DNA of 48,786 nt from assembly GCF_006345805.1 (NCBI RefSeq), contig NW_021835064.1, forward strand, positions 1-48,786, written 5' to 3'. Positions 1,942 through 43,788 of this stretch are shown here, piece after piece. The notes beneath the pieces are model-generated. The model was not told where the DNA came from. It ran no database searches and saw nothing but the letters and a program-made list of their open reading frames with translations. This stretch comes from Octopus sinensis (Eukaryota). The position numbers were made by a program, and so were the translations under genes. Positions within the stretch are counted from its first letter, which is position 1; each line of letters opens with the position of its first letter.

Positions 1942-4851
1942 ACAGCAAAACTGTAAGGGCAGGAAAGAAACACCTGCAAATTCTACCTGAGGGGGACTGC
2001 TGGTACGGCGTTTGAAGGTGCAAACTGTCGCTTTGCACATCGGAGGCCCTACCCAAAACCGCACGGACGCGAGACAGAGGTCCCTCCCTCAGGGAGAAAA
2101 AAACAAAAAAACAAAAAGAAAAAAGTTATTAAAAGAAGGGAAAAAAGCGCACTGACACTACTGAAAGACGGTATGCAGATGTGGTGCGCGGAAAACCCAA
2201 CAGGTGGCCCAGCTTCACCCAGATGTGAGAAGGGCGGCAGCTGAACAGCAGTCTTTTTTGTGCATGGCACAAAAAATTGTTCAGCAGCTGACCTGGCTAC
2301 AAGCACAAAGCTGGAACTACCCCACATAAGGCCACCTCCAACAGATGCAGGATGGCCACCACAGACACCAACACCAACACACACACCCACAAAAATATTT
2401 CTACTGAATGTAGGAGGGCTGCTGCGCGGAAACTGTAAAAAGAAAATTTCATTCCTGAGAGACCTTGTGACATGCAATCAAGCTATATGCATGGCACTCA
2501 CAGAAAACGCATCTTGAACCGATATAGGTGATGCAGAAATACAAATGCCGCAATATGCAGTCATACGCACAGATAGAAAAGGGAGGAGCCATGGTGGAGT
2601 TGCAATGTACACCCGAGATGACCTCACGCCCCAAGTCCTGCTGTCATATTCAAACTCAGTATGTGAAACTCAAATTGTACACATAAGACAACTGAATATC
2701 GTCATATGCACTACATATCGCCCACCAGATGCCCCAAAACACTCGGCATGTTTGAAGACTGCTAACAAAAATAGGAGAAGTTCCTCACCAAAACCTTGAA
2801 CAGCACAACAGTGTATTCTTCATGGGTGACTTTAACATCCCCAATGTGGAATGGCCTGGGGGGCAGATGCTCCAGGGATGAACCCATCAGCAGGCACAGG
2901 TGGAGTCCTGCTCCATCTCACAAATGTCTCTTTCATGGAGCAAATAGTTCTGCAACCAACAAGGGCAGATAATATACTGGATCTCTGCTTCACAAAAATA
3001 TGGATATTATCCATAATGTTAATGTGATGCCGACAATGATCTCGGATAACAACATGATAGAGCTGTCATGTATGGAACAAAAGCCCCCGCAGGCACACAG
3101 CCTATACGAAGCACCCCACCATCTCTCCAACTTAAACTTTTATAAAGCCAACTGGAAGTCGATTGAGAAAGAGATCCTCAAACAGGATTGGCCTGAATGT
3201 CTCTCCACACCGGACATAAACATGAAACACAAACACTTCAGGTCCATAATACAAGCCATATGTGACAAATATGTCCCAATGTGCAGGGCCAGCACACAAA
3301 GAACAAAAACAGGATCCCTAGAGAAAGGAGGATTCTTATGAGACGACGGACAAGGATTGCAAACCGCCTGAGCAAAGCAAACAAAAAGTGGTGAGAAGTC
3401 TCGGCTCGCTCGAAAGAATGCTAATGGAAAACTGAGAAAAGTCTACATCAGTCCCATGAAAAGGAAGAGAGAGCAGATAAAGAAGCTTGGGTGATAGAAA
3501 ATATAAAATACAACCCTAAGCTTTCTTAAGTTTGCCAAAGTGAACAGCCACAGTGCACCAGAGAATAGGACCTCTCTTCCAAAAGATGGCTCTCTCACAG
3601 GAAATCCCACGAGGATAAGTGAAATACTGACGAACAGTTCCAAAGTGTGTTCACTAACACTCTAGGACACAGGCAAGTAAACAACCCAGAAGAATTCTTT
3701 GCCACTTTACCGCGGCCAAAGAGACAAAATTGAGTACATCAACATCGAAGATGATGATATCACACTAGCCATTGATGAGATTGACACAAACTCAGCTGGG
3801 ACCTGATGGATTCCCAGCGATCCTTCTCAAATCGTGCAACGAGCCCTTGCAAAACGCTACAGCTTCTTTTTCAGAGCTTTCTTACAAGTGGTAAGCTCCC
3901 AGTCAAACTGAAAAGAGGGTAATATGCCCTATCCATAAGGGAGGTAGCAGAGCAGATGCTAAAATTATAGGCCTATCTCTCTGACCTCACACATCAGCAA
4001 AGTCATGGAAACGAATAGTCCGTAAGAAACTAATCATGTTCCTTGAAGAAAATGACTTACTGTCTAACACCCAGCATGGATTTCGACCAGGTAGAGGCTA
4101 CCTAACACAGCTCCTGCAACACTATGACTGGTGTTGAAACAGCTACTAAATGGCTCAAGGTGGTGTAATATATCTTGACTTTGCAAAAAGCCTTTGATAA
4201 AGTCGACCATGGTATTGATCTGTCACAAACTGCGTGGGTCTCGGCATAGGCGGGAAACTTGGAGAGTGGCTGCACAACTTCCTAAAAGACAGAAAAACAG
4301 GCAGTTGTGAGCAATGGAGCCACCTCCAAGGAAAACGCAAATAACAAGCGGTGTCCCACAGGGCACTGTCTTGGGGCCACTGATGTTCATAGTGGCCCTT
4401 TCAGACATGCCTTCAGTTGCTACGATGACCACTCTTGCTAGCTATGCAGATGACAAAAAGTCACCCACGCAATACAAAACCCTGAAAATATTGCGCATCT
4501 GCAACATGAGCTGGACACAATATACAGGTGGGCTGAGGACAACAACATGCAGTTAATGCAGGTAAGTTCCAGGCCCTGCGCTACTGGCACACTAAGGTAA
4601 ATGACGTGAAGACTGGATACACTGGCCCAGGAAGAATTGCAATCCCTGAGTCAAAATCAGTGGCGTGACTGGCATTGACATTGAGCAATGATGCATCTTT
4701 CCAAATGCATATTGCTAATCTGGTGATAAAATGCAGACGGCTAGCTGGATGGATTCTCTGAACTTTCAGAACAAGAGAGAAGGAGACATGATGGTCCTAT
4801 GGAAACTTCGTCCTCAGCCGCTTGGACTACTGCTCCCAACTTTGGTCACCA
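1942..4851 (+). mobile_element. CR1-group non-LTR retrotransposon (LINE), truncated at both ends and frameshifted
   Basis: ORF1 C-terminal remnant (CCCH-like finger, RRYADVVRG). APE endonuclease motifs: IFLLNVGGL, MALTE, RTDRKGRSHGGVAMY, YRPP, GDFNIPNVEW. RT motifs: GPDGFP, NYRPISLTSHISKV, QHGFRPGR, IYLDFAK/AFDKVDHG, SGVPQGTVLGPLMF, YADD. Ends at YCSQLWSP. Clade assigned from motif recall. Confidence 0.9.
2386..4851 (+). pseudogene. LINE ORF2 remnant (apurinic-like endonuclease plus reverse transcriptase) split by many 1-bp indels
   Basis: Successive ORF-track fragments (2260-2517, 2545-2799, 3000-3341, 4314-4556) carry EN and RT motifs in the correct order in different frames. Confidence 0.88.
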
Positions 4852-6614: not shown

Positions 6615-6972
6615 GGGAGTGGCTGTGTGGTAAGTAGCTTGCTAACCAACCACACGGTTGCGGGTTCAGTCCCACTGCGTGGCATCTTGGGCAAGTGTCT
6701 TCTGCTATAGCCCCGGGCCGACCAATGCCTTGTGAGTGGATTTGGTAGACGGAAACTGAAAGAAGCCTGTCGTATATATATATATATATGTGTGTGTGTT
6801 TGTGTGTCTGTGTTTGTCCCCCTAGCATTGCTTGACAACCGATGCTGGTGTGTTTAGGTCCCCGTCACTTAGCGGTTCGGCAAAAAGAGACCGATAGAAT
6901 AAGTACTAAAAGGTGGTGCTCCAGCATGGCCGCAGTCAAAATGACTGAAACAAGTAAAAGAGTAAAAGAGAG
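6615..6972 (+). mobile_element. tRNA-derived SINE family A (GGCTGTGTGGTAAG head, internal (TA)n/(TG)n, AGTAAAAG tail)
   Basis: A/B-box-like head (GGTTCAGTCCC), CTTGGGCAAG core and repeated tail; several further copies in the window. Confidence 0.85.
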
Positions 6973-8519: not shown

Positions 8520-8748
8520 GTGTGTATATATGTTTGTGTGTCTGTGTTTGTCCCCCCTACATCGCTTGACAACCGATGCTGGTGTGTTTACGTCCCCGTA
8601 ACCTGGCGGTTCGGCAAAAGTGACCGATAGAATAAGTACTAGGCTTACAAAGAATAAGTCCTGGGGTTGATTTGCCCGACTAAAGGCGGTGCTCCAGCAT
8701 GGCCACAGTCAAATGATTGAAACAAGTAAGAGAGTAAAGAGTAAGAGT
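8308..8748 (+). mobile_element. SINE family A, full length
   Basis: Same head, core and tail as 6615-6972. Confidence 0.85.
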
Positions 8749-11149: not shown

Positions 11150-11307
11150 GGCGTGGTCGTGTGGTAAGAAGCTTGCTTCCCAACCACATGATTCCGGGTT
11201 CAGTCCCGCTGCGTGGCACTTTGGGCAAGTGACTTCTTCTGTAGCCTCAGCCCGACCTAAGCCTTGTGAGTAGATTTGGTAAACGGAACTGAAAGAAAGC
11301 CCGTCGC

Positions 11308-11355
<48 letters not shown>

Positions 11356-11441
11356 CATATTTATATATATATACATATTTATATATATATACATATTATA
11401 TATATATATATATAATATATAATATTTATACATATTATATA

Positions 11442-11472
<31 letters not shown>

Positions 11473-11707
11473 GCGTGTGTGTGTATGTATGTATGTGTTT
11501 GTTTTTTGTGTCTGTGTTTGTCCCCCACCATCGCTTGACAACCGATGTCGGTGTGTTTACGTCCCCGTCAACTAGCAATTCGGCAAAAAGAGACCGACAG
11601 AATTAGTACTAATTTACAAAGAATAAGTCCTATAGTCGATTTGCTCGACTAAAGGCGGCGTTCCAGCATGGCCGCAGTTAATTGCCTGAAACAAGTAAAA
11701 GAGTAAA
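11150..11707 (+). mobile_element. SINE family A with expanded internal (TA)n
   Basis: Homologous to the other family A copies. Confidence 0.85.
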
Positions 11708-11881
11708 CGCCATTGAGAGAGAACCTCTGCATGGACTCTTGACAGGTTAGAAAAACAACAGACAAAACCTCACTTGATTCCTTGGTAACCGTTTTGTTTT
11801 TATCACAAAGGGGGACTTTAAGTAATTTAGTCTAGATATAAATTTAAAAATAGACGACTGTATCAACCAAAATGTTCCTTT

Positions 11882-12308
11882 CTTTTAATTTTTACTTCGT
11901 TCAGTCATTGGATTCCGCCCATGCTGGAGCATCACCTTGAAGGGTTTGATCGAAGAAATAGATCCCAGCACTTATTTTTATTTTTAAAGTCTAGTTCTTA
12001 TTCTATTGGTCACTTACGCCAAACGAAGTTACAGTGACGTGAACAAACAAGCACCGGTTGTCAAGCTGTCTAATGGAACACAAACACAGATACAAAGACA
12101 CCGCGATACGTACATACATACATACGTAGCCGTGTGAGTGTATGAAAGACAGGCTTCTTTCAGTTTCCATCTACCAAATCCACTTACAAAATATTAGTCG
12201 ATCCAGGCTATTTGCATTATAGTAAGACACTTGTGCAACGTACTGCACAGTCGGACTGAACCTGGAACCTCGCAGTTCAAAGCGAGTCTTAACTGCACAG
12301 CTATGCCT
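11882..12308 (-). mobile_element. Diverged SINE family A variant
   Basis: Tail (CAGTCATT...CATGCTGGAGCA) and head (TCTACCAAATCCACT...GCACAGCTATGCC) match family A in reverse. Confidence 0.7.
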
Positions 12309-12342: not shown

Positions 12343-12758
12343 GGCGGCGAGCTGGCAGAAACGTTAGCACGCCGGCCGTAATGCTTAGCTGTATTTCGTC
12401 TGCAGTTACGTTCTGAGTTCAAATTCCACCGAGGTCGACTTTGCCTTTCATCCTTTCGGGGTCGATTAAATAAGTACCAGGTACGCACTGGGGTCGATAT
12501 AATCGACTTAATCTGTTTGTCTGTCCTTGTTTATCCTCTTTGTGTTTAGCTCCTTGTTGGTAGTAAAGAAATAGGTATTTCGTCTGCCTTTACGTTCTGA
12601 GTTCAAATTCCGCCGCGGTCGACTTTGCCTTTCATCCTTTCGGGATCGATTAAATAAAGTACCAGTTTCGCACTGGGGTCGATATAATCGACTTAATCCG
12701 TTTGTCTGTCCTTGTTTGTCCCCTCTATGTTTAGCCCCTTGTGGGTAATAAAGAAATA
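12343..12758 (+). mobile_element. tRNA-derived SINE family B, head plus two tandem body units, with 17-bp TSD
   Basis: GGCGGCGAGCTGGCAGAA head, GAGTTCAAATTCC B-box. TSD TATATAT(T/C)AGTCTCCAA at 12326-12342 and 12759-12775. Confidence 0.9.
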
Positions 12759-15264: not shown

Positions 15265-16015
15265 ACACTTTGAATTCAATGAAATATAAAAGAAACGAAA
15301 AATACAACAGGGAACCTGGTTTAGTAAATACCGTTTATCGCTTAAATGAATGAAAACAGTGGCAGCGGTTCGGACGATAGTCCTTCATCAAAACAAGAGA
15401 AATACATTGCGAGAATAAGAAAGAGGAAAAGGGTTGAACAAGAATATGTTTGAATATCTAGAGATCATATAATACTATATATATATATGTATATATGATA
15501 TAATACTATATATATATGTATATATACAGAAGGCTTGTTTTATAAGGTTAAAGAATATATTTAAGTCGTTATGTTAGAAAAATGTTATAAAATTTTGCGT
15601 ATAGTAAGATAGTTTTTGGAGAAATTACCTGTTTCGTGTAAACTTTTCAAATTTCTCAAATATCTTTACCTACATCGTGTCATGTCTTCGTTGTGAAGTG
15701 CAAAGTAGAGTTCCAGGCAGGGGGAGGTAATAAGGTATTTCTTCCGGTATAAGAGAGATAATCGCCTTATACTTCTTTTCCTCTTTTTTAACGAGATGAG
15801 TTTCTCTGTATAAGACTGTTAAGATGGTTAAGTTCAGGCTTATATTTTTCGATGAAGAATGTTTCCTTGTTTAGTCTAATTTGTGTTGGTGTTCCAATAG
15901 CACATTGATAGAATTGAAAGATTAAAAATTGTGGTAGTAGATGCTTTGCGCATTTCTCAATATGCTCACTAAAGGGTATCATTCTGTATTCTGGGAATGC
16001 AATCTGTTGATACCC
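15265..16015 (-). mobile_element. Penelope-like element 3' fragment: GIY-YIG endonuclease C-terminus, 3' UTR/pLTR and degenerate HHR
   Basis: Minus frame reads QQIAFPEYRMIPFSEHIEKCA...IRLNKETFFIEKYKPELN, matching the PLE GIY-YIG H/E/P-LN end motifs from recall. TTGATGA-A-GGAC-TATC-GTCC-GAAC at 15365-15391. Confidence 0.7.
15788..16009 (-). pseudogene. GIY-YIG endonuclease C-terminal remnant of a Penelope-like ORF
   Basis: ORF track 15788-15982, open a few codons further upstream; 5'-truncated. Confidence 0.65.
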
Positions 16016-16230
16016 TTTACTCTTTTACTCTTTTACTTGTTTCAGTCATTTGACTGCGGCCATGCTGGAGCACCACCTTTAGTCGAGCAAATCCACCCCA
16101 GGACTTATTCTTTGTAAGCCTAGTACTTATTCTATCGGTCTCATTTGCCGAACCGCTAATTTACTAAGACGTAAGCACAGCAGCATCGGTTGTCAAGCGA
16201 TGTTGGGGGGACAAACACAGACACACAAAC

Positions 16231-16260
<30 letters not shown>
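16016..16260 (-). mobile_element. SINE family A, 3' half, split by the HHR array
   Basis: Tail TTTACTCTTTTACTC... through GGACAAACACAGACAC, then (TACA)n(TA)n. Confidence 0.85.
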
Positions 16261-16261
<1 letters not shown>

Positions 16262-16510
16262 AGTTTAACAATTAAGGATAATCTCTTATAAGGGATCTTA
16301 CAAGAAATTATCGGGTAGCTAGCGTGAAAACCTCATAAAAGAAAAGAATCCGAAAATAATTTTTTTCTTTTGAACAAATTAATTATATCTATATTGTATA
16401 AGGGCATTATTACACATAAATGCCTCACACTAGGAGGGACAAAGTCATTACTACCAAAAATTATACTAATCATACCCAATGCAGTTTTTCAAAGCAAGAC
16501 ATTTAAAAAT

Positions 16511-16579
16511 GAATTATGTTCTGTATCACCGTGATTTCACATACAACTTGCGTCTAATGATCCTCAGCAGAACTGATTC
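16511..16579 (-). ncRNA. Type I hammerhead ribozyme, unit 1 (intact)
   Basis: Exact reverse complement of 19289-19357. Confidence 0.8.
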
Positions 16580-16981
16580 TGAATACATCATAAATAACCA
16601 ACCTTATGTAGCGAAGACGAACAGACAACTGTTCACCTCCGGCCAAGCACATGGAATGTTTATAAATCATATATCCGGTAAATGGCGGGCTTTTTTACGA
16701 ATGCATGTCGGGTAATGAAAAGTATTTCGGATAAGTTTAACAATTAAGGATAATCTCTTAATAAGGGATCTTAACAAGAAATTATCGGTAGCTAGCGTGA
16801 AACCTCATAAAAGAAAAGAATCCGAAAATAATTTTTTTCTTTTGACAAATTAATTTATCTATATTGTATAAAGGGCATTATTACACATAAATGCCTCACA
16901 CTAGGAGGGACAAAGTCATTACTACCAAAAATTATACTAATCATACCCAAATGCAGTTTTTCAAGCAAGACATTTAAAAAT

Positions 16982-17049
16982 GAATTATGTTCTGTATCAC
17001 CGTGATTTCACATACAACTTGCGTCTAATGATCTCAGCAGAACTGATTC
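16982..17049 (-). ncRNA. Type I hammerhead, unit 2 (1-nt deletion in the CUGAGGA core)
   Basis: ATCTCAG instead of ATCCTCAG; mutation or assembly error. Confidence 0.6.
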
Positions 17050-17454
17050 TGAATACATCATCATAAAACAACCTTATGTAGCGAAGACGAACAGACAACT
17101 GTTCACTCCGCCAAGCACATGGAATGTTTATAAATCATATATCCGGTAAATGGCGGGCTTTTTAACGAACTGCATGTCGGTAATGAAAGTATTTCGGAAT
17201 AAGTTTAACAATTAAGGATAATCTCTAATAAGGGATCTTAACAAGAAATTATCGGGTACTAGCGTGAAAACCTCATAAAAGAAAAGAATCCGAAAATAAT
17301 TTTTTTCTTTTGAACAATTAATATATCTATATTGTATAAAGGGCATTATTACACATAAATGCTCACACTAGGAGGGACAAAGTCATTACTATACCAAAAT
17401 TATACTATCCTAACATACCCAAATGCAGTTTTTCAAAGCAAGACATTTAAAAAT

Positions 17455-17523
17455 GAATTATGTTCTGTATCACCGTGATTTCACATACAACTTGCGTCTA
17501 ATGATCCTCAGCAGAACTGATTC
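17455..17523 (-). ncRNA. Type I hammerhead, unit 3 (intact)
   Basis: Identical to consensus. Confidence 0.8.
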
Positions 17524-17924
17524 TGAATACATCATAAATAAACCCACCTTATGTAGCGAAGACGAACAGACAACTGTTCACTCCGGCCAAGCACATGGAA
17601 TGTTTATAAATCATATATCCGGTAAATGGCGGGCTTTTTACGAACTGCATGTCGGGTAATGAAAGTATTTCGGATAAGTTTAACAATTAAGGATAATCTC
17701 TTAATAAGGGATCTTAACAAGAAATTATCGGGTAGCTAGCGTGAAACCTCATAAAAGAAAAGAATCCGAAAATAATTTTTTTTTTTGAAAAATTAATTAT
17801 ATCTATATTGTATAAAGGGCATTATTACACATAAATGCCTCACACTAGGAGGGACAAGTCATTACTACCAAAAATTATACTATCATACCCAAATGCAGTT
17901 TTTCAAAGCAAGACATTTAAAAAT

Positions 17925-17991
17925 GAATTATGTTCTGTATCACCGTGATTCACATACACTTGCGTCTAATGATCCTCAGCAGAACTGATTC
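17925..17991 (-). ncRNA. Type I hammerhead, unit 4 (two 1-nt deletions, including in GAAA)
   Basis: GTGATTCAC and ATACACT each lack one base. Confidence 0.55.
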
Positions 17992-18391
17992 TGAATACAT
18001 CATAAATAAACCCACCTTATGTAGCGAGACGAACAGACAACTGTTCACTCCGGCCAAGCACATGGAATGTTTATAAATCATATATCCGGTAAATGGCGGG
18101 CTTTTTACGAACTGCATGTCGGGTATGAAAAGTATTTCGGAATAGTTTAACAATTAAGGATAATCTCTTAATAAGGGATCTTAACAAGAAATTATCGGGT
18201 AGCTAGCGTGAAAACCTCATAAAAGAAAAGAATCCGAAAATAATTTTTTTCTTTTGAACAAATTAATTATATCTATATGTATAAAGGGCATTATTACACA
18301 TAAATGCCTCACACTAGGAGGGACAAAGTCATTACTACCAAAATTTACTAATCATACCAAATGCAGTTTTTCAAAGCAAGACTTTAAAAAT

Positions 18392-18458
18392 GAATTATTT
18401 CTGTATCACCGTGATTTCACATACAACTTGCGTCTAATGATCCTCAGCAGACTGATTC
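18392..18458 (-). ncRNA. Type I hammerhead, unit 5 (two 1-nt deletions in stem I)
   Basis: TTATTTCTG and CAGACTG each lack one base. Confidence 0.6.
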
Positions 18459-18862
18459 TGAATACATCATAAATAAACCAACCTTATGTAGCGAAGACGA
18501 ACAGACAACTGTTCACTCCGCCAAGCACATGGAATGTTTATAAATCATATATCCGGTAATGGCGGGCTTTTTACGAACTGCATGTCGGGTAATGAAAAGT
18601 ATTTCGGAATAAGTTTAACAATTAAGGATAATCTCTTAATAAGGGATCTTAACAAGAAATTATCGGTAGCTAGCGTGAAAACCTCATAAAAGAAAAGAAT
18701 CCGAAAATAATTTTTTTCTTTTGAACAAATTAATTATATCTATATTGTATAAAGGGCATTATTACACATAAATGCCTCACACTAGGAGGGACAAAGTCAT
18801 TACTACCAAAAATTATACTAATCATACCCAAATGCAGTTTTTCAAAGCAGACATTTAAAAAT

Positions 18863-18930
18863 GAATTATGTTCTGTATCCCGTGATTTCACATACAACTT
18901 GCGTCTAATGATCCTCAGCAGAACTGATTC
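18863..18930 (-). ncRNA. Type I hammerhead, unit 6 (1-nt deletion in stem III)
   Basis: TATCCCGTGAT instead of TATCACCGTGAT. Confidence 0.6.
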
Positions 18931-19288
18931 TGAATACATCATAAATAAACCAACCTTATGTAGCGAAGACGAACAGACAACTGTTCACTCTCACTCCGGC
19001 CAAGCACATGAATGTTTATAAATCATATATCCGTAAATGGCGGGCTTTTTACGAACTGCATGTCGGGTAACGCTAGCTACCCGATAATTTCTTGTTAAGA
19101 TCCCTTATTAGAGATTATCCTTAATTGTTAAACTTATTCCGAAATACTTTTCATTACCCGACATGCAGTTCGTAAAAAGCCCGCCATTTACCGATATATG
19201 ATTTATAAACATTCCATGTGCTTGGCCGGAGTGAACAGTTGTCTGTTCGTCTTCGCTACATAAGGTTGGTTTATTTATGATGTATTCA

Positions 19289-19357
19289 GAATCAGTTCTG
19301 CTGAGGATCATTAGACGCAAGTTGTATGTGAAATCACGGTGATACAGAACATAATTC
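19289..19357 (+). ncRNA. Type I hammerhead, unit 7 (intact; predicted cleavage after 19344)
   Basis: GAAU-CA-GUUCUG [stem I] CUGAGGA U CAU-UA-GAC-GCAA-GUU-GU-AUG U [stem II] GAAA-UCAC-G-GUGA-UA^ [stem III, AUA triplet] CAGAAC-AUA-AUUC. Confidence 0.8.
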
Positions 19358-19762
19358 ATTTTTAAATGTCTTGCTTTGAAAAACTGCATTTGGGTATGAT
19401 TAGTATAATTTTTGGTAGTAATGACTTTGTCCCTCCTAGTGTGAGGCATTATGTGTAATAATGCCCTTTATACAATATAGATATAATTAATTTGTTCAAA
19501 AGAAAAATTATTTTCGGATTCTTTTCTTTTATGAGGTTTTCACGCTAGCTACCCGATAATTTCTTGTTAAGATCCCTTATTAAGAGATTATCCTTAATTG
19601 TTAAACTTATTCCGAAATACTTTTCATTACCCGACATGCAGTTCGTAAAAAGCCCGCCATTTACCGGATATATGATTTATAAACATTCCATGTGCTTGGC
19701 CGGAGTGAACAGTTGTCTGTTCGTCTTCGCTACATAAGGTTGGTTTATTTATGATGTATTCA

Positions 19763-19830
19763 GAATCAGTTCTGCTGAGGATCATTAGACGCAAGTGTAT
19801 GTGAAATCACGGTGATACAGAACATAATTC
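19763..19830 (+). ncRNA. Type I hammerhead, unit 8 (1-nt deletion in distal stem II)
   Basis: GCAAGTGTAT lacks one T; core intact. Confidence 0.7.
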
Positions 19831-20234
19831 ATTTTTAAATGTCTTGCTTTGAAAAACTGCATTTGGGTATGATTAGTATAATTTTTGTAGTAATGACTTT
19901 GTCCCTCCTAGTGTGAGGCATTTATGTGTAATAATGCCCTTTATACAATATAGATATAATTAATTTGTTCAAAAGAAAAAAATTATTTTCGGATTCTTTT
20001 CTTTTATGAGGTTTTCACGCTAGCTACCCGATAATTTCTTGTTAAGATCCCTTATTAAGAGATTATCCTTAATTGTTAAACTTATTCCGAAATACTTTTC
20101 ATTACCCGACATGCAGTTCGTAAAAAGCCCGCCATTTACCGGATATATGATTTATAAACATCCATGTGCTTGGCCGGAGTGAACAGTTGTCTGTTCGTCT
20201 TCGCTACTAAGGTTGTTTATTTATGATGTATTCA

Positions 20235-20303
20235 GAATCAGTTCTGCTGAGGATCATTAGACGCAAGTTGTATGTGAAATCACGGTGATACAGAACATAA
20301 TTC
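20235..20303 (+). ncRNA. Type I hammerhead, unit 9 (intact)
   Basis: Identical to consensus. Confidence 0.8.
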
Positions 20304-20708
20304 ATTTTTAAATGTCTTGCTTGAAAAACTGCATTTGGGTATGATTAGTATAATTTTTGGTAGTAATGACTTTGTCCCTCCTAGTGTGAGGCATTTATGT
20401 GTAATAATGCCCTTTATACAATATAGATATAATTAATTTGTTCAAAAGAAAAAAATTATTTTCGGATTCTTTTCTTTTATGAGGTTTTCACGCTAGCTAC
20501 CCGATAATTTCTTGTTAAGATCCCTTATTAAGAGATTATCCTTAATTGTTAAACTTATTCGAAATACTTTTCATTACCCGACATGCAGTTCGTAAAAAGC
20601 CCGCCATTTACCGGATATATGATTTATAAACATTCCATGTGCTTGGCCGGATGAACAGTTGTCTGTTCGTCTTCGCTACATAAGGTTGGTTTATTTATGA
20701 TGTATTCA

Positions 20709-20777
20709 GAATCAGTTCTGCTGAGGATCATTAGACGCAAGTTGTATGTGAAATCACGGTGATACAGAACATAATTC
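20709..20777 (+). ncRNA. Type I hammerhead, unit 10 (intact)
   Basis: Identical to consensus. Confidence 0.8.
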
Positions 20778-21186
20778 ATTTTTAAATGTCTTGCTTTGAA
20801 AAACTGCATTTGGGTATGATTAGTATAATTTTTGGTAGTAATGACTTTGTCCCTCCTAGTGTGAGGCATTTATGTGTAATAATGCCCTTTATACACAATA
20901 GATATAATTAATTTGTTCAAAAGAAAAAAATTATTTTCGGATTCTTTTCTTTTATGAGGTTTTCACGCTAGCTACCCGATAATTTCTTGTTAAGATCCCT
21001 TATTAAGAGATTATCCTTAATTGTTAAACTTATTCCGAAATACTTTTCATTACCCGACATGCAGTTCGTAAAAAGCCCGCCATTTACCGGATATATGATT
21101 TATAAACATTCCATGTGCTTGGCCGGAGTGAACAGTTGTCTGTTCGTCTTCGCTACATAAGGTTGGTTATTTTATGATTGTATTCA

Positions 21187-21255
21187 GAATCAGTTCTGCT
21201 GAGGATCATTAGACGCAAGTTGTATGTGAAATCACGGTGATACAGAACATAATTC
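21187..21255 (+). ncRNA. Type I hammerhead, unit 11 (intact)
   Basis: Identical to consensus. Confidence 0.8.
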
Positions 21256-21663
21256 ATTTTTAAATGTCTTGCTTTGAAAAACTGCATTTGGGTATGATTA
21301 GTATAATTTTTGGTAGTAATGACTTTGTCCCTCCTAGTGTGAGGCATTTATGTGTAATAATGCCCTTTATACAATATAGATATAATTAATTTGTTCAAAG
21401 AAAAAAATTATTTTCGGATTCTTTTCTTTTATGAGGTTTTCACGCTAGCTACCCGATAATTTCTTGTTAAGATCCCTTATTAAGAGATTATCCTTAATTG
21501 TTAAACTTATTCCGAAATACTTTTCATTACCCGACATGCAGTTCGTAAAAAGCCCGCCTTTTACCGGATATATGATTTATAACATTCCATGTGCTTGGCC
21601 GGAGTGAACAGTTGTCTGTTCGTCTTCGCTACATAAGGTTGTTTATTTATGATGATGTATTCA

Positions 21664-21732
21664 GAATCAGTTCTGCTGAGGATCATTAGACGCAAGTTGT
21701 ATGTGAAATCACGGTGATACAGAACATAATTC
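21664..21732 (+). ncRNA. Type I hammerhead, unit 12 (intact)
   Basis: Identical to consensus. Confidence 0.8.
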
Positions 21733-21847
21733 ATTTTTAAATGTCTTGCTTTGAAAAACTGCATTTGGGTATGATTAGTATAATTTTTGGTAGTAATGAC
21801 TTTGTCCCTCCTAGTGTGAGGCATTTATGTGTAATAATGCCCTTTAT

Positions 21848-21855
<8 letters not shown>

Positions 21856-21886
<31 letters not shown>

Positions 21887-22008
21887 GACGGGCTTCTTTC
21901 AATCTCCGTCTACCAAATCAACTCACAATGCTTTGGTCGACCCGGTGTCCAAGGTGCCATGCAGTGGGTTGAACACGGAATCATTTTACTAACCACACAA
22001 CCACTCCT
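21856..22008 (-). mobile_element. SINE family A, 5' half (partner of 16016-16260)
   Basis: (TA)n then CGACGGGCTTCTTTC...TCTACCAAATC...CCACACAACCACTCC is the family A head in reverse. Confidence 0.8.
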
Positions 22009-22109
22009 GAACTTTTTATATTTATTTTTCAGTAATGACCACACCCTTCCCTCTATTCTTATCTTTCTCATCCTACTTCCTAAAATCTTGCAAGGACACC
22101 AGCCCTGTG

Positions 22110-23493: not shown

Positions 23494-24074
23494 TACCTAT
23501 TTCTTTACCACCCACAAGGGGCTAAACACAGAGAGGGCAAACAAGGACAGACAAACGGATTAAGTCGATTATATCGACACCAGTGCGTAACTGGTACTTA
23601 ATTTATCGACCCCGAAAGGATGAAAGGCAAAGTCGACCTCGGCGGAACTTGAACTCAGAACGTAACGGCAGACGAAATACCTATTTCTTTATTACCCACA
23701 AGGGGCTAAACACAGAGAGGACAAACAAGGACAGACAAACGGATTAAGTCTATTATATCGACACCAGTGCGTAACTGGTACTTATTTAATTGACCCCGAA
23801 AGGATGAAACGCAAAGTCGACCTCGGCGGAATTTAAACTCAGAACGTAGCAGCATGCGAAATACCTATTTCTTTACCACCCACAAGGGGCTAAACACAGA
23901 GAGGACAAACAAGGACAAACAAGCTGATTAAGTCGATTACATCGACCCCAGTGCGTAACTGGTACTTATTTAATTGACCCCGAAAGGATGAAAGGCAAAC
24001 TCAGAACTTAACAGCAGACGAAATACGGCTATGCATTTCGCCCAGCGTGCTAAAGATTCTGCCGGCTCGCCGCC
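23494..24074 (-). mobile_element. SINE family B, head plus three tandem 184-bp body units
   Basis: TACCTATTTCTTT unit boundaries at 23494, 23678 and 23862; head ends CTCGCCGCC. Confidence 0.9.
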
Positions 24075-34063: not shown

Positions 34064-34345
34064 GGTGTTTCTAGTTGTGGACATACAATGTCGTTCGCTT
34101 CGAATATTGTTGAGTGTAAAATAATATCAAACTTTATAAACACCAATCAGAAAAAGTCAGAAAAAGAATAAATATAGCCCCCTTCACCCACAACAGCACC
34201 ACCCCAACAACACCAACAACAACACCTTCACTATCATCACCCTCACCACCACCACCACCACCACCTCCACCATCACATTATATCTGATGAGGAGTTAGCA
34301 TCGCATTATATCTGATGAGGAGTTAGCATCGCATTATATCTGATG

Positions 34346-34748
34346 GCAGAAAGGTTAGCACGCCGGGCGAAATGCTTAGCGGTATTTCGTCTGCCGTTAC
34401 GTTCTGAGTTCAAATGCCACCGAGGTCGACTTTGCCTTTCATTCTTTCGGGGTCGATTAAATAAGTACCAGTTATGCACTGGGGTCGATGTAATCGACTC
34501 AATCCGTTTGTCTGTCCTTGTTTGTCCCCTCTGTGCGTAACCCCTTGTGGGTAATAAAGAAATAGGTATTTCGTCTGCTGTTACGTTCCGAGTTCAAATT
34601 CCGCTGAGGTCGACTTTGCCATTCATCCTTTCCAGGTCGATAAATAAAGTACCAGTTTCGCACTGGGGTCGATGTAATCGACTTAATCCGTTTGTCTGTC
34701 CTTGTTTGTCCCCTCTGTGTTTAGCCTCTTTGGGGTATTAAAGAAATA
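34346..34748 (+). mobile_element. SINE family B, 5'-trimmed head plus two body units
   Basis: Junction AAAGAAATAGGTATTTCGTCTG at about 34556-34577; flanks share TATATCTGATG. Confidence 0.85.
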
Positions 34749-39011: not shown

Positions 39012-39576
39012 GGCGACGATCTGGCAGAAACGTTAGGACGCCGGGCGAAATGCGTAGCCGTATTTTGTCTGCCGCTACGTTCTGAGTTCAAATTCCGCCG
39101 ATGTCGACTTTGCCTTTCATCCTTTCGGGGTCGATAAATTAAGTACCAGTTACGCACTGGGTCGATGTAATCAACTTAATCCGTTTGTCTGTCCTTGTTT
39201 GTTCCCTCTGTGTTTAGCCCCTTGTGGGTAGTAAAGAAATAGGTATTTCGTCTGCCGCTACGTTCTGAGTTCAAATTCGGCCGAAGTCGACTTTGCCTTT
39301 CATCCTTTCGGGGTCGATAAATTAACTACCAGTTACGCACTGGGGTCGATATAATCGACTTAATCCGTTTGTCTGTCCTTGTTTGTCCCTTCTGTGTTTA
39401 GCCCCTTGTGGGTAATAAAGAAATAGGTATTTCGTCTGCCGCTACGTTCTGAGTTCAAATTCCGCCGAGGTCGATATTGCCTTTCATCCTTTCGGGGTCG
39501 ATTAAATAAGTACCAGTTACGCACTGGGGTCGATGTAATCTCTGTGTTTAGCCCCTTGTGGGTAGTAAAGAAATAG
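39012..39576 (+). mobile_element. SINE family B, head plus three body units, 9-bp TSD
   Basis: Junctions at about 39241 and 39423; TSD TAGTGGAGG at 39005-13 and 39578-86. Confidence 0.9.
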
Positions 39577-43060: not shown

Positions 43061-43457
43061 CTTTCCTATCTATACCGGCGTCAAGTAGGACAAGGAATAT
43101 CTATCCGTCAAGTAGGACAAGGAATAACCATCCACATTTGCTTTAATAAAGCACAAATAACTTAACCTTTCTATTTCACGCCCTTCTGTGATGGATTGGT
43201 AGGCACAGGTCTTTGTGAACGAAATGTTACAAAGCTGTAGTTCCTGCAGCAACATGTTGTAACCGTAATAAATTTAGTATTTATTTTTTAAAGTTTGCCT
43301 CATAAACGATTGCGGTTTGCCATTGTTCATCACGTTTTCTTTTGTCATATACATAGTTATATACTGTTGCAGTAGGTGTTAAACGAGTTGTCTTTTATAT
43401 TATGCATTTTCTTTTGTTGAACTGTCAATACTCTTTTCATTTTTATTCTTTCCTTTG

Positions 43458-43788
43458 TACTCTTTTATTAGTTTCAGTAATTTGACTGTGGCCATGCGGG
43501 AGCACCGCCTTTCGTCGAGCAAATCAACCCTATGACTTATTCTTTGCAAGCCTAGTACTTATTCTATCGTTCACTTTTGCCGAACCGCTAAGTTACGGGG
43601 ACGTAAACACAGACACATACATATACGACGGGCTTCTTTCAGTTTCCGTCTACCAAATCCACTCACAAGGCTTTGGTCAGCCTGAGGCTATAGTAGAAGA
43701 CACTTGCCCAAGGTGCCACGTCGTGGGACTGAACCCAGAACCATGTGGTTCGTAAACAAGCTACTTACCACACAGCCACTCTTGCGTC
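43458..43788 (-). mobile_element. SINE family A copy
   Basis: Homology to family A. Confidence 0.85.

What the first reader, a model, noticed from the sequence alone, without database searches (positions are those of the whole stretch)
16261..21855. Tandem array of ~475-bp units each encoding a type I hammerhead ribozyme: a candidate cephalopod retrozyme / circRNA system
Seen: 12 regularly spaced copies (467-478 bp apart) of a 69-nt motif that folds as a complete type I HHR: stem I GUUCUG/CAGAAC extended past an internal loop by GAAU/AUUC, core CUGAGGA, stem II with a GCAA tetraloop, GAAA, stem III AUCAC/GUGAU, and an AUA cleavage triplet. Seven copies are identical; five differ only by 1-2 deleted bases. 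The rest of the unit is non-coding and hairpin-rich (AACAG/CUGUU, GGCAUU/AAUGCC, CCUC/GAGG). Known: newt satellite 2, Schistosoma Sm-alpha, cave-cricket pDo500 and metazoan non-LTR retrozymes are tandem HHR repeats whose transcripts self-cleave to monomers; circular forms are known for retrozymes. Inference: multimeric transcripts would cut into ~475-nt monomers that may circularise and reinsert by rolling-circle reverse transcription. I know of no described octopus family like this, but could not search.
Basis: partly seen in the sequence, partly recalled or inferred. Interest (0 to 1): 0.92.

Follow-up and report, generated by a model that had tools for sequence, protein, structure and literature searches.

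The report
Hammerhead-ribozyme tandem repeat, inverted insertion
A 5.6-kb block made of twelve near-identical 478-bp non-coding units, each carrying a hammerhead self-cleaving-RNA motif, has been inserted as two head-to-head arrays into a (TA)n microsatellite; it looks like a new (probably cephalopod) member of the already known animal "retrozyme" family of ribozyme-bearing mobile repeats.

Summary
The repeat is real: 12 copies of a 478-bp, 33% GC, non-coding unit, each with the 69-nt type I hammerhead-like motif.

The motif has the full CUGANGA/GAAAY/RUH core, a 6-bp helix I with a closing stem, and a near-palindromic helix III. It also has a U.U mismatch at the base of a long helix II. No Rfam hammerhead model, and no model I built from four validated retrozyme ribozymes, scores it significantly. 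A descriptor scan puts chance at about 1e-5 per unit.

The two flanks are halves of one SINE-like repeat whose internal (TA)n is uninterrupted in four paralogues, so the block is an insertion.

Best reading: a non-LTR retrozyme-type element integrated by dual-primed reverse transcription, with a Penelope-like element as the prime suspect. Cleavage, circular RNA, genome-wide copies and host identity could not be tested. It is a new member of a known kind, of moderate interest.

The parts
16259..19069 (-). Left half-array: about 6 units of the 478-bp repeat, with the ribozyme-sense strand on the minus strand. The RNA-sense 3' end is at the outer (left) boundary, at unit position ~71. The 5' end is at the centre, at unit position 89.
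   Evidence: TRF period 468, 6.0 copies, 95% matches; unit alignment; skew sign
19070..21858 (+). Right half-array: 5.9 units with the sense strand on the plus strand. The 5' end is at the centre (unit position 3). The 3' end is at unit position ~430 and merges into (TA)n.
   Evidence: TRF period 473, 5.9 copies, 98% matches
19070..19154 (+). Single-copy spacer of about 85 nt at the head-to-head junction. The mirror image of the left arm only starts at 19155, so the palindrome is imperfect. At most 1 nt of microhomology is present at 19069/19070.
   Evidence: Direct reading, plus the alignment register
19289..19357 (+). Reference hammerhead motif. Layout: GAAU-CA-GUUCUG (helix I), CUGAGGA, helix II (U.U, 3 bp, UA/GU loop, 3 bp, GCAA), GAAA, helix III AUCA-CGG-UGAU, A17, CAGAAC-AUA-AUUC. 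The predicted cut is after 19344.
19763..19830 (+). Hammerhead copy with a 1-nt deletion in helix II
20235..20303 (+). Hammerhead copy, identical; cut after 20290
20709..20777 (+). Hammerhead copy, identical; cut after 20764
21187..21255 (+). Hammerhead copy, identical; cut after 21242
21664..21732 (+). Hammerhead copy, identical; cut after 21719
16511..16579 (-). Hammerhead copy, identical; cut between 16524 and 16523
16982..17049 (-). Hammerhead copy with a 1-nt deletion inside the core (CUGAGA)
17455..17523 (-). Hammerhead copy, identical; cut between 17468 and 17467
17925..17991 (-). Hammerhead copy with 2 deletions (helix II, and GAAA reduced to GAA)
18392..18458 (-). Hammerhead copy with 2 deletions, one in each strand of helix I
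18863..18930 (-). Hammerhead copy with a 1-nt deletion in helix III
16241..16260 (.). (TA)n tract next to the left outer end (target microsatellite)
21851..21885 (.). (TA)17 tract next to the right outer end (target microsatellite)
16017..16240 (.). Left half of the interrupted SINE-like repeat
   Evidence: BLAST against paralogues in the window, 75-91% identity; alignment
21886..21945 (.). Right half of the interrupted SINE-like repeat

Best explanation
The block is one insertion of a non-autonomous, ribozyme-bearing retroelement of the animal 'non-LTR retrozyme' type.

Shown:
- A 478-bp non-coding unit carries a type I hammerhead-like motif.
- It is present as two multimers joined head-to-head, with both RNA-sense 3' ends facing outward.
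- It sits inside the (TA)n tract of a SINE-like repeat that is uninterrupted in its paralogues.

Inferred:
- A donor array is transcribed into multimeric RNA.
- The hammerhead cuts after A17 (for example after 19344), probably most efficiently as a double hammerhead formed by two neighbouring copies through the near-palindromic helix III. This yields 478-nt monomers with 5'-OH and 2',3'-cyclic phosphate ends.
- A host RtcB-type ligase can close these monomers into a highly self-paired circle.
- For integration, a reverse transcriptase/endonuclease supplied in trans cut both strands of the AT-rich target, and each 3' end primed cDNA synthesis on more-than-unit-length RNA (a circle or an uncleaved multimer). 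The two minus-strand cDNAs were then joined at the centre with at most 1 nt of microhomology.
- The prime suspect for the enzyme is a Penelope-like element. These elements carry hammerheads, prefer AT-rich or (TA)n sites, cleave and extend both strands in vitro, and typically leave inverted 5'-truncated copies.
For: Locus architecture.

Insertion: the left and right flanks are adjacent halves of one repeat in four paralogues within the window (11707-11253, 6970-6713, 43448-43678, 11881-12189), separated there only by a (TA)n or short spacer.

Motif:
- The full CUGANGA/GAAAY/RUH core is present, with helix I of 6 bp plus an internal loop and a 4-bp closing stem.
- The chance rate is 0.010 per Mb at the observed helix lengths and 0.38 per Mb with a loose descriptor.
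- Each atypical feature has a precedent in an experimentally cleaving retrozyme ribozyme. Axolotl HHR_Amex2 (construct Ax353) has U.U at the helix II base and a GUA site. Construct Ax330 has CUGAGGA (PMC7229834 section 15 and Suppl. Table 2).
- Long helix II and a palindromic helix III are traits of ribozymes that act as dimers (PMC4209133).
- The cofold minimum-energy structure of two motifs (-32.9 kcal/mol against 2 x -11.8) adopts the swapped helix I and extended helix III of a double hammerhead.

Whole unit: the circular sense-strand fold is -121.7 kcal/mol against -90.2 +/- 6.2 for shuffles (z = -5.1, 67% paired), and the antisense strand gives z = -3.2. GC is 33%. There are no protein homologues or Pfam domains.

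Mechanism, from the literature:
- Retrozyme features and RtcB circularisation: PMC7229834.
- Penelope-like element tandem/inverted insertions and (TA)n bias: PMC8557442.
- The Penelope-like protein PAc cleaves and extends both strands, prefers AT-rich DNA and initiates internally on unprocessed RNA: PMC11167929.
- Retrozymes are related to Penelope-like element pLTRs in Xenopus: 10.64898/2026.07.22.740005.

Neither outer end coincides with the ribozyme cut site, so the template was longer than a cleaved linear monomer.
Against: - No Rfam hammerhead family matches, even at E<=10 on a 111-nt slice.
- A covariance model built only from four validated retrozyme hammerheads scores the copies 9.4 bits (E about 2), below unrelated hairpins.
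- The isolated motif folds no better than shuffles (z = +0.9), and the hammerhead fold lies 2.8 kcal/mol above the minimum-energy structure.
- All 12 copies derive from one template, and their differences are mostly homopolymer deletions (80% against 52% expected, p = 6e-6). There is therefore no covariation or conservation evidence.
- No second locus or relative was found anywhere I could search, and there is no sign of a Penelope-like reading frame among the window's longer ORFs.
- The head-to-head topology is also produced by LINE twin priming.
- There is 3-5 nt of TA microhomology at the outer ends, unlike the non-homologous initiation reported for PAc.
- The two arms are almost equal in length (2811 and 2792 bp), which is a coincidence under independent rolling-circle synthesis.
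Confidence: 0.6

Rival explanations
1. This is an ordinary minisatellite or satellite DNA amplified at the DNA level, by unequal exchange or by rolling-circle replication of extrachromosomal circles that are then end-joined into a broken (TA)n site. The hammerhead-like motif would be fortuitous, or a dead relic with no role in spread.
For: - No covariance model recognises the motif.
- The isolated motif is not thermodynamically special.
- Only one locus is known.
- (TA)n tracts are fragile and prone to breakage (general knowledge).
- Near-identity of the units fits any recent amplification.
- About 55 motifs of this quality are expected by chance in a genome of about 2.7 Gb, extrapolating.
Against: - The chance of such a motif inside a given 478-bp unit is about 1e-5, or 4e-4 with the loosest descriptor.
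- The motif comes with the canonical 6-bp helix I, loop and closing stem, and with a palindromic helix III.
- The structure is strand-specific, with sense-strand z = -5.1.
- The whole set of features (size, GC, non-coding, tandem) matches described retrozymes.
Confidence: 0.2
2. The inverted arrangement is an assembly artefact, such as a chimeric or fold-back long read. The true locus would be a single-orientation array.
For: - The region carries dense homopolymer-deletion noise typical of poorly polished long-read consensus.
- The two arms are nearly equal in length.
- Penelope-like-type structures are known to confuse assemblers (PMC8557442).
Against: - The palindrome is imperfect, with an ~85-nt single-copy spacer.
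- The two outer ends lie at different unit positions (~71 and ~430).
- The two flanks are the two different halves of one SINE copy rather than mirror images. A fold-back read would duplicate one flank.
- The copies' private variants are not mirrored across the centre.
Confidence: 0.1
3. The unit is not an independent non-autonomous element. It would be the amplified pseudo-LTR or terminal region of an autonomous Penelope-like element, or of another retrotransposon, that is 5'-truncated at this locus.
For: - Penelope-like insertions are mostly 5'-truncated, tandem or inverted, and carry the hammerhead in the pLTR.
- Xenopus retrozymes are homologous to pLTRs.
- The long helix II resembles Penelope-like element hammerheads.
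Against: - Twelve complete units are present and none continues into coding sequence.
- Helix I is the canonical 6 bp with a loop and closing stem, unlike the minimal Penelope-like variants with a 4-5-bp helix I and no helix III.
- No reverse transcriptase or GIY-YIG relic turned up among the window's longer ORFs, though only eight of them were scanned against Pfam.
Confidence: 0.1

Closest known systems
Metazoan non-LTR retrozymes (Cervera & de la Pena 2020, PMC7229834; coral, mussel, axolotl and many invertebrate phyla)
   Same: Tandem units of a few hundred bp, each with a type I hammerhead. Low GC. No ORF, LTR, primer-binding site or polypurine tract. The predicted circular monomer is highly self-paired. 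Array sizes of a few to a few tens of units. A mollusc example (Mytilus, 350-390 bp) already exists.
   Different: - At 478 bp the unit is above the 150-450 bp first given for these repeats, though inside the 51-972 bp range of the 2026 preprint.
- Helix II is long (9 positions plus GCAA) with a U.U base and an internal loop.
- Helix III has 4 bp, against the usual 1-2.
- The locus is two inverted multimers in a (TA)n, an arrangement and target not mentioned in that paper.
- No cephalopod family is described in the searchable literature.
Newt satellite 2, Schistosoma Sm-alpha and cave-cricket pDo500 hammerhead satellites
   Same: Tandem repeats that carry a type I hammerhead and whose transcripts self-cleave to monomers. 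Helix III is weak or palindromic, which favours double-hammerhead action (PMC4209133, PMC7229834).
   Different: There is no sequence similarity, and Rfam Hammerhead_1, which I recall being built on such sequences, gives no match. Only one locus is known here rather than a genome-wide satellite.
Penelope-like elements and their pLTR hammerheads (PMC4209133, PMC8557442, PMC11167929)
   Same: Hammerhead in a repeated non-coding region. Long helix II. Tandem organisation plus an adjacent inverted 5'-truncated copy. Insertion into AT-rich or (TA)n DNA. Both target strands are cut and extended in vitro.
   Different: There is no RT/GIY-YIG reading frame here. The hammerhead has full helices I and III rather than the minimal form. 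No 30-40-bp 'tail' is discernible. There is microhomology with the target at the outer ends.
LINE twin priming (5'-inverted L1 insertions)
   Same: The same head-to-head topology, with both 3' ends outward and a short-microhomology inversion junction.
   Different: The element here is non-coding, multimeric and lacks a poly(A) or LINE 3' tail. This comparison rests on my own knowledge of L1 5' inversions and was not tested here.
Plant LTR retrozymes and viroid-like or HDV-like circular RNAs
   Same: A ribozyme-defined monomer that can circularise into a compact RNA.
   Different: Plant retrozymes use type III hammerheads inside LTRs and have a primer-binding site and polypurine tract. Viroid-like and HDV-like agents have ribozymes in both polarities or no DNA stage. 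Here only one polarity carries a ribozyme motif, and the element is genomic DNA.

Membership tests
Hammerhead ribozyme, type I | Conserved catalytic centre CUGANGA / GAAAY / RUH in the type I order (helix I open) | tested here: met
   CUGAGGA ... GAAAU ... AUA, in 8 of 12 copies by the descriptor; the other four have 1-2 nt deletions
Hammerhead ribozyme, type I | Three helices around the core, including a paired 10.1-11.1 at the base of helix II | tested here: inconclusive
   Helix I is 6 bp plus a 4-bp closing stem. Helix III is 4 bp plus a triloop. Helix II starts with U.U and has an internal loop. U.U at this position occurs in the active axolotl HHR_Amex2.
Hammerhead ribozyme, type I | Recognition by curated or independent covariance models | tested here: not met
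   No Rfam hammerhead hit at the gathering score or at E<=10. The model from four validated retrozyme ribozymes gives 9.4 bits, E about 2.
Hammerhead ribozyme, type I | Site-specific self-cleavage | not testable with these tools
   Needs in vitro transcription of monomer and dimer
Hammerhead ribozyme, type I | Covariation or conservation of helices among independent copies | tested here: inconclusive
   All copies come from one template, and their differences are homopolymer indels. No other loci were found.
Metazoan non-LTR retrozyme | Short tandem repeats (about 150-450 bp, up to ~970) each holding a type I hammerhead | tested here: met
   478-bp unit, 6 + 6 copies; size ranges
Metazoan non-LTR retrozyme | Low GC (<45-50%), with no ORF, LTR, primer-binding site or polypurine tract | tested here: met
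   GC 33%. The longest ORF is 98 aa, antisense, with no homologue or Pfam domain. Primer-binding site and polypurine tract were judged by eye only.
Metazoan non-LTR retrozyme | Monomer predicted to form a stable, highly self-paired circle | tested here: met
   Sense circle -121.7 kcal/mol, z = -5.1, 67% paired
Metazoan non-LTR retrozyme | Dispersed copies in the genome / evidence of insertion | tested here: inconclusive
   This locus is an insertion into a SINE's (TA)n. No second locus could be searched for, because no host genome is available here.
Metazoan non-LTR retrozyme | Expression as linear and circular monomer RNA | not testable with these tools
   Needs a northern blot, RNase R treatment and divergent RT-PCR
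Metazoan non-LTR retrozyme | Co-occurrence with Penelope-like elements in the host | not tested
   Octopus vulgaris has recently active Penelope-like families (PMC13282606), but the identity of the window's host was not established.
Penelope-like element (autonomous) | ORF with telomerase-like RT plus GIY-YIG endonuclease | tested here: not met
   No such ORF in the array, and none seen among the window's longer ORFs. Only eight ORFs were scanned against Pfam; the rest were inspected by eye.
Penelope-like element (insertion signature only) | Tandem copies with an adjacent inverted 5'-truncated copy, in an AT-rich or (TA)n target | tested here: met
   Head-to-head arrays with both outer ends in (TA)n. 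Definition.
Penelope-like element (insertion signature only) | 30-40-bp 'tail' extension at one end | tested here: not met
   Beyond the (TA)n tracts, both flanks continue directly as SINE sequence.

The most novel reading that the evidence does not exclude
The locus is a fossil of a single dual-primed integration event. A Penelope-like RT/endonuclease, acting in trans on retrozyme RNA, would have cut both strands of a (TA)n tract and copied more-than-unit-length ribozyme RNA from both ends.

If so, it would be junction-level evidence, independent of co-occurrence and pLTR homology, for which machinery mobilises animal retrozymes. It would also be a first cephalopod family. The near-equal arms, and ends that avoid the cleavage site, would point to an uncleaved finite multimer as the template rather than a rolling monomeric circle.
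Probability: 0.35. Interest if true: 0.6.

Novelty: new member of a known kind. Interest (0 to 1): 0.45.

Why it matters
Animal retrozymes are abundant sources of small circular RNAs, but how they move is still inferred indirectly. The evidence so far is co-occurrence with Penelope-like elements and, in Xenopus, homology to their terminal repeats.

This locus is a young, unrearranged insertion with both junctions, the internal inversion junction and an identifiable empty-site sequence. That is the kind of material from which an integration mechanism can be read. If other copies in the host genome show the same head-to-head, (TA)n-targeted pattern, the Penelope-like link would be strengthened, and the choice between a circular and a multimeric template could be tested.

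The hammerhead combines canonical retrozyme traits (helix I) with Penelope-like traits (long helix II, palindromic helix III), and all Rfam models miss it. This is a reminder that covariance-model scans undercount such ribozymes.

By itself, another tandem hammerhead repeat in a mollusc is not surprising.

Tried and rejected
- Rfam at gathering threshold on the whole window, at E<=10 on 16000-22100, and on a 111-nt slice: no hammerhead or other ribozyme family matched. Only sub-threshold miRNA hits on (TA)n and snoRNA-like noise appeared.
- A covariance model from four experimentally validated retrozyme hammerheads (coral, mussel, two axolotl; sequences from PMC7229834 Suppl. Table 2): the copies align end to end but score only 9.4 bits. 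The model is dominated by helix I sequence and prefers unrelated hairpins. Inconclusive.
- Using the 98-aa antisense ORF of the consensus as bait for gene calls on other assemblies: no homologue.
- Exact and gapped hammerhead patterns against metagenome contigs (twice), viral contigs and prokaryote genome contigs: no matches.
- BLAST of the consensus against the rest of the window: no other copy.
- Host identification through a LINE relic: one homologue on an unnamed 1.7-kb contig of GCA_024449705.1, and no paper cites that accession. So 'octopus' rests on my recollection of the SINE sequences.
I inspected long non-repetitive ORF segments by eye instead and saw only a LINE endonuclease relic.
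- Fold-back duplication or a palindromic read artefact: rejected because the ends, flanks and centre are asymmetric.
- Treating the between-copy deletions as evidence of decay or selection: rejected because they are concentrated in homopolymers.

Full report
OBSERVATION.

Tandem Repeats Finder does not report one array. It reports two adjoining arrays: 16259-19070 (period 468, 6.0 copies, 95% matches) and 19070-21861 (period 473, 5.9 copies, 98% matches). Their consensus units are reverse complements of each other.

A 21-nt core probe hits five sites on the minus strand left of 19069 and six on the plus strand to the right, with 0 expected by chance. The sixth left-hand copy carries a deletion in the core. 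Long inverted-repeat pairs link the two halves, and the AT and GC skews change sign at about 19000.

I placed all units in the ribozyme-sense orientation and aligned them. This gives a 478-nt consensus. So the count, identity pattern, unit length and predicted cut site (after 19344) are right.

THE COPIES ARE ONE OBSERVATION.

Differences between units are almost all single-base deletions. Of the 60 deletions, 48 fall in homopolymer runs, against 52% expected (p = 6e-6). The apparent substitutions are clusters of shifted indels, and they are not mirrored across the centre. This looks like residual long-read consensus noise on 12 copies of one template. The array therefore holds no information about selection on the ribozyme, and the deletions that hit the core in four left-arm copies should not be read as decay.

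IS THE HAMMERHEAD REAL?

Reading the consensus directly gives this layout:
- Helix I: GAAU-CA-GUUCUG
- Core: CUGAGGA
- Helix II: U.U, then C-G, A-U, U-A, then a UA/GU internal loop, then G.U, A-U, C-G, capped by GCAA
- GAAA
- Helix III: AUCA-CGG-UGAU
- A17, followed by the cut
- Helix I return: CAGAAC-AUA-AUUC

The literature's catalytic consensus (CUGANGA / GAAAY / RUH; PMC7229834 supplement) is fully met. Helix I has the canonical 6 bp followed by an internal loop and a 4-bp closing stem (PMC4209133). The realistic forms are 4 bp plus a triloop, or an intermolecular 10-bp helix with a central G.G mismatch.

Two motifs cofolded give -32.9 kcal/mol against 2 x -11.8, and they adopt the swapped helix I and extended helix III of a double hammerhead.

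Each odd feature has a precedent in a ribozyme shown to cleave:
- U.U at the helix II base and a GUA site in axolotl HHR_Amex2 (construct Ax353).
- CUGAGGA in axolotl construct Ax330.
- A long helix II and palindromic helix III in Penelope-like-element hammerheads.

On chance: with the literature core and the observed helix lengths, 4 hits occurred in 392 Mb of dinucleotide shuffles. That is about 1e-5 per 478-bp unit, or 4e-4 with the loosest descriptor.

Against the motif:
- No Rfam hammerhead model matches, even at E<=10 on 111 nt.
- A model I built from four validated retrozyme hammerheads gives only 9.4 bits.
- The isolated motif is not unusually stable.

I conclude that the motif is a structurally complete but atypical hammerhead. 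Its activity remains to be shown.

THE REST OF THE UNIT.

GC is 33%. The longest ORF (98 aa, antisense) has no homologue and no Pfam domain. The sense-strand circular monomer folds to -121.7 kcal/mol against -90.2 +/- 6.2 for shuffles (z = -5.1, 67% paired). The antisense strand gives z = -3.2. No ribozyme motif is present on the opposite polarity.

THE BLOCK IS AN INSERTION.

The left flank (16017-16240) and the right flank (21886-21945) match the two adjacent halves of a SINE-like repeat. Four other copies of that repeat occur in the window: 11707-11253, 6970-6713, 43448-43678 and 11881-12189. In each, the two halves are separated only by a (TA)n or a short spacer. Both outer ends of the block abut (TA)n tracts. 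The unit occurs nowhere else in the window.

ARCHITECTURE AND WHAT IT IMPLIES.

Both RNA-sense 3' ends point outward. They lie at unit positions ~71 (left) and ~430 (right), and each shares 3-5 nt of TA with the microsatellite. Both 5' ends meet at 19069/19070, at unit positions 89 and 3, with at most 1 nt of microhomology. This leaves an ~85-nt single-copy spacer.

Three facts exclude a fold-back duplication or a palindromic-read artefact:
- The centre is asymmetric.
- The outer ends differ.
- The flanks are two different halves of one repeat.

The topology is what results when both 3' ends of a double-strand break prime cDNA synthesis. It is known for L1 twin priming (my own knowledge). It is also the rule for Penelope-like elements, which leave tandem copies with an adjacent inverted 5'-truncated copy, favour AT-rich or (TA)n targets, and whose purified protein cleaves and extends both strands (PMC8557442 and PMC11167929).

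Neither outer end coincides with the ribozyme cut site, so the template was not a cleaved linear monomer. It was a circle, an uncleaved multimer, or one long multimer primed twice. The nearly equal arms (2811 and 2792 bp) favour a finite template over two independent rolling-circle runs, but this is weak evidence.

COMPARISON WITH WHAT IS KNOWN.

The element meets the sequence-level definition of metazoan non-LTR retrozymes, which are already described in a mollusc (Mytilus). These are now argued to be non-autonomous derivatives of Penelope-like elements (10.64898/2026.07.22.740005).

I found no description of a cephalopod family, nor of the inverted, (TA)n-targeted arrangement for retrozymes, in the searchable literature. 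Octopus vulgaris does have recently active Penelope-like families and very active Dong-R4 LINEs, so both candidate mobilisers exist in that genus. However, I could not confirm the host of this window.

VERDICT.

The description needs correcting (two inverted arrays, an atypical ribozyme), and the rolling-circle step is not established. This is a new member of a known kind, of moderate interest. Its main value is as a clean insertion from which the integration mechanism of animal retrozymes might be read.

Noticed in passing
window 8523-8744(-), 11253-11707(-), 6713-6970(-), 43448-43678(+), 11881-12189(+), and 16017-16240 with 21886-21945: A SINE-like composite repeat with an internal (CA)n/(TA)n tract occurs at least six times in 48 kb. 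The microsatellite length varies from a few to about 80 repeats between copies. One copy is the target of the array insertion.
   Followed up: partly
window 12391-12758, 23494-23999, 34381-34748, 39060-39540: Units of about 184 bp occur in short tandems (2-2.8 copies, 88-93% matches) at four places. The units at 12391-12758, 34381-34748 and 39060-39540 share a consensus, and the one at 23494-23999 reads as its reverse complement. The sequence looks tRNA-derived, but ARAGORN and Rfam call no tRNA.
   Followed up: no
window ~2443-3369 (+): A frameshifted relic of a LINE apurinic-type endonuclease (Exo_endo_phos). The only database homologue is a 297-aa gene call on a 1.7-kb contig of GCA_024449705.1, with 68% protein and 70% DNA identity. 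The organism behind that accession could not be determined.
   Followed up: partly
window 16259-21858: Transcription reading through the 19069/19070 junction would produce a hairpin RNA with ~2.8-kb arms. This is a plausible source of siRNA or piRNA against the family. It is speculation only.
   Followed up: no
window 19064-19083: The inversion junction forms a small hairpin, CGGGTA-ACGCTAGC-TACCCG. This happens because the unit contains TACCCGA twice (positions 11-17 and 89-95) and a palindromic GCTAGC. Whether this guided the joining is unknown.
   Followed up: no
window 20692-20754, 21644-21709 and equivalent positions in other units: Weak, sub-threshold resemblance to C/D-box snoRNAs (SNORD50, 15-20 bits against a gathering score of 42) across AUGAUGU...CUGA in the 5' half of the hammerhead. 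I judge it to be chance.
   Followed up: partly
window 16259-19069 versus 19070-21858: The left arm carries roughly three times more 1-nt deletions per unit than the right arm (about 5-10 against 1-5). I have no explanation. It may reflect uneven polishing of an inverted repeat.
   Followed up: no
window 34271-34345: A 28-nt unit repeated 2.7 times contains CTGATGAGGAG. It lacks a GAAA element and does not satisfy even the loose hammerhead descriptor.
   Followed up: partly
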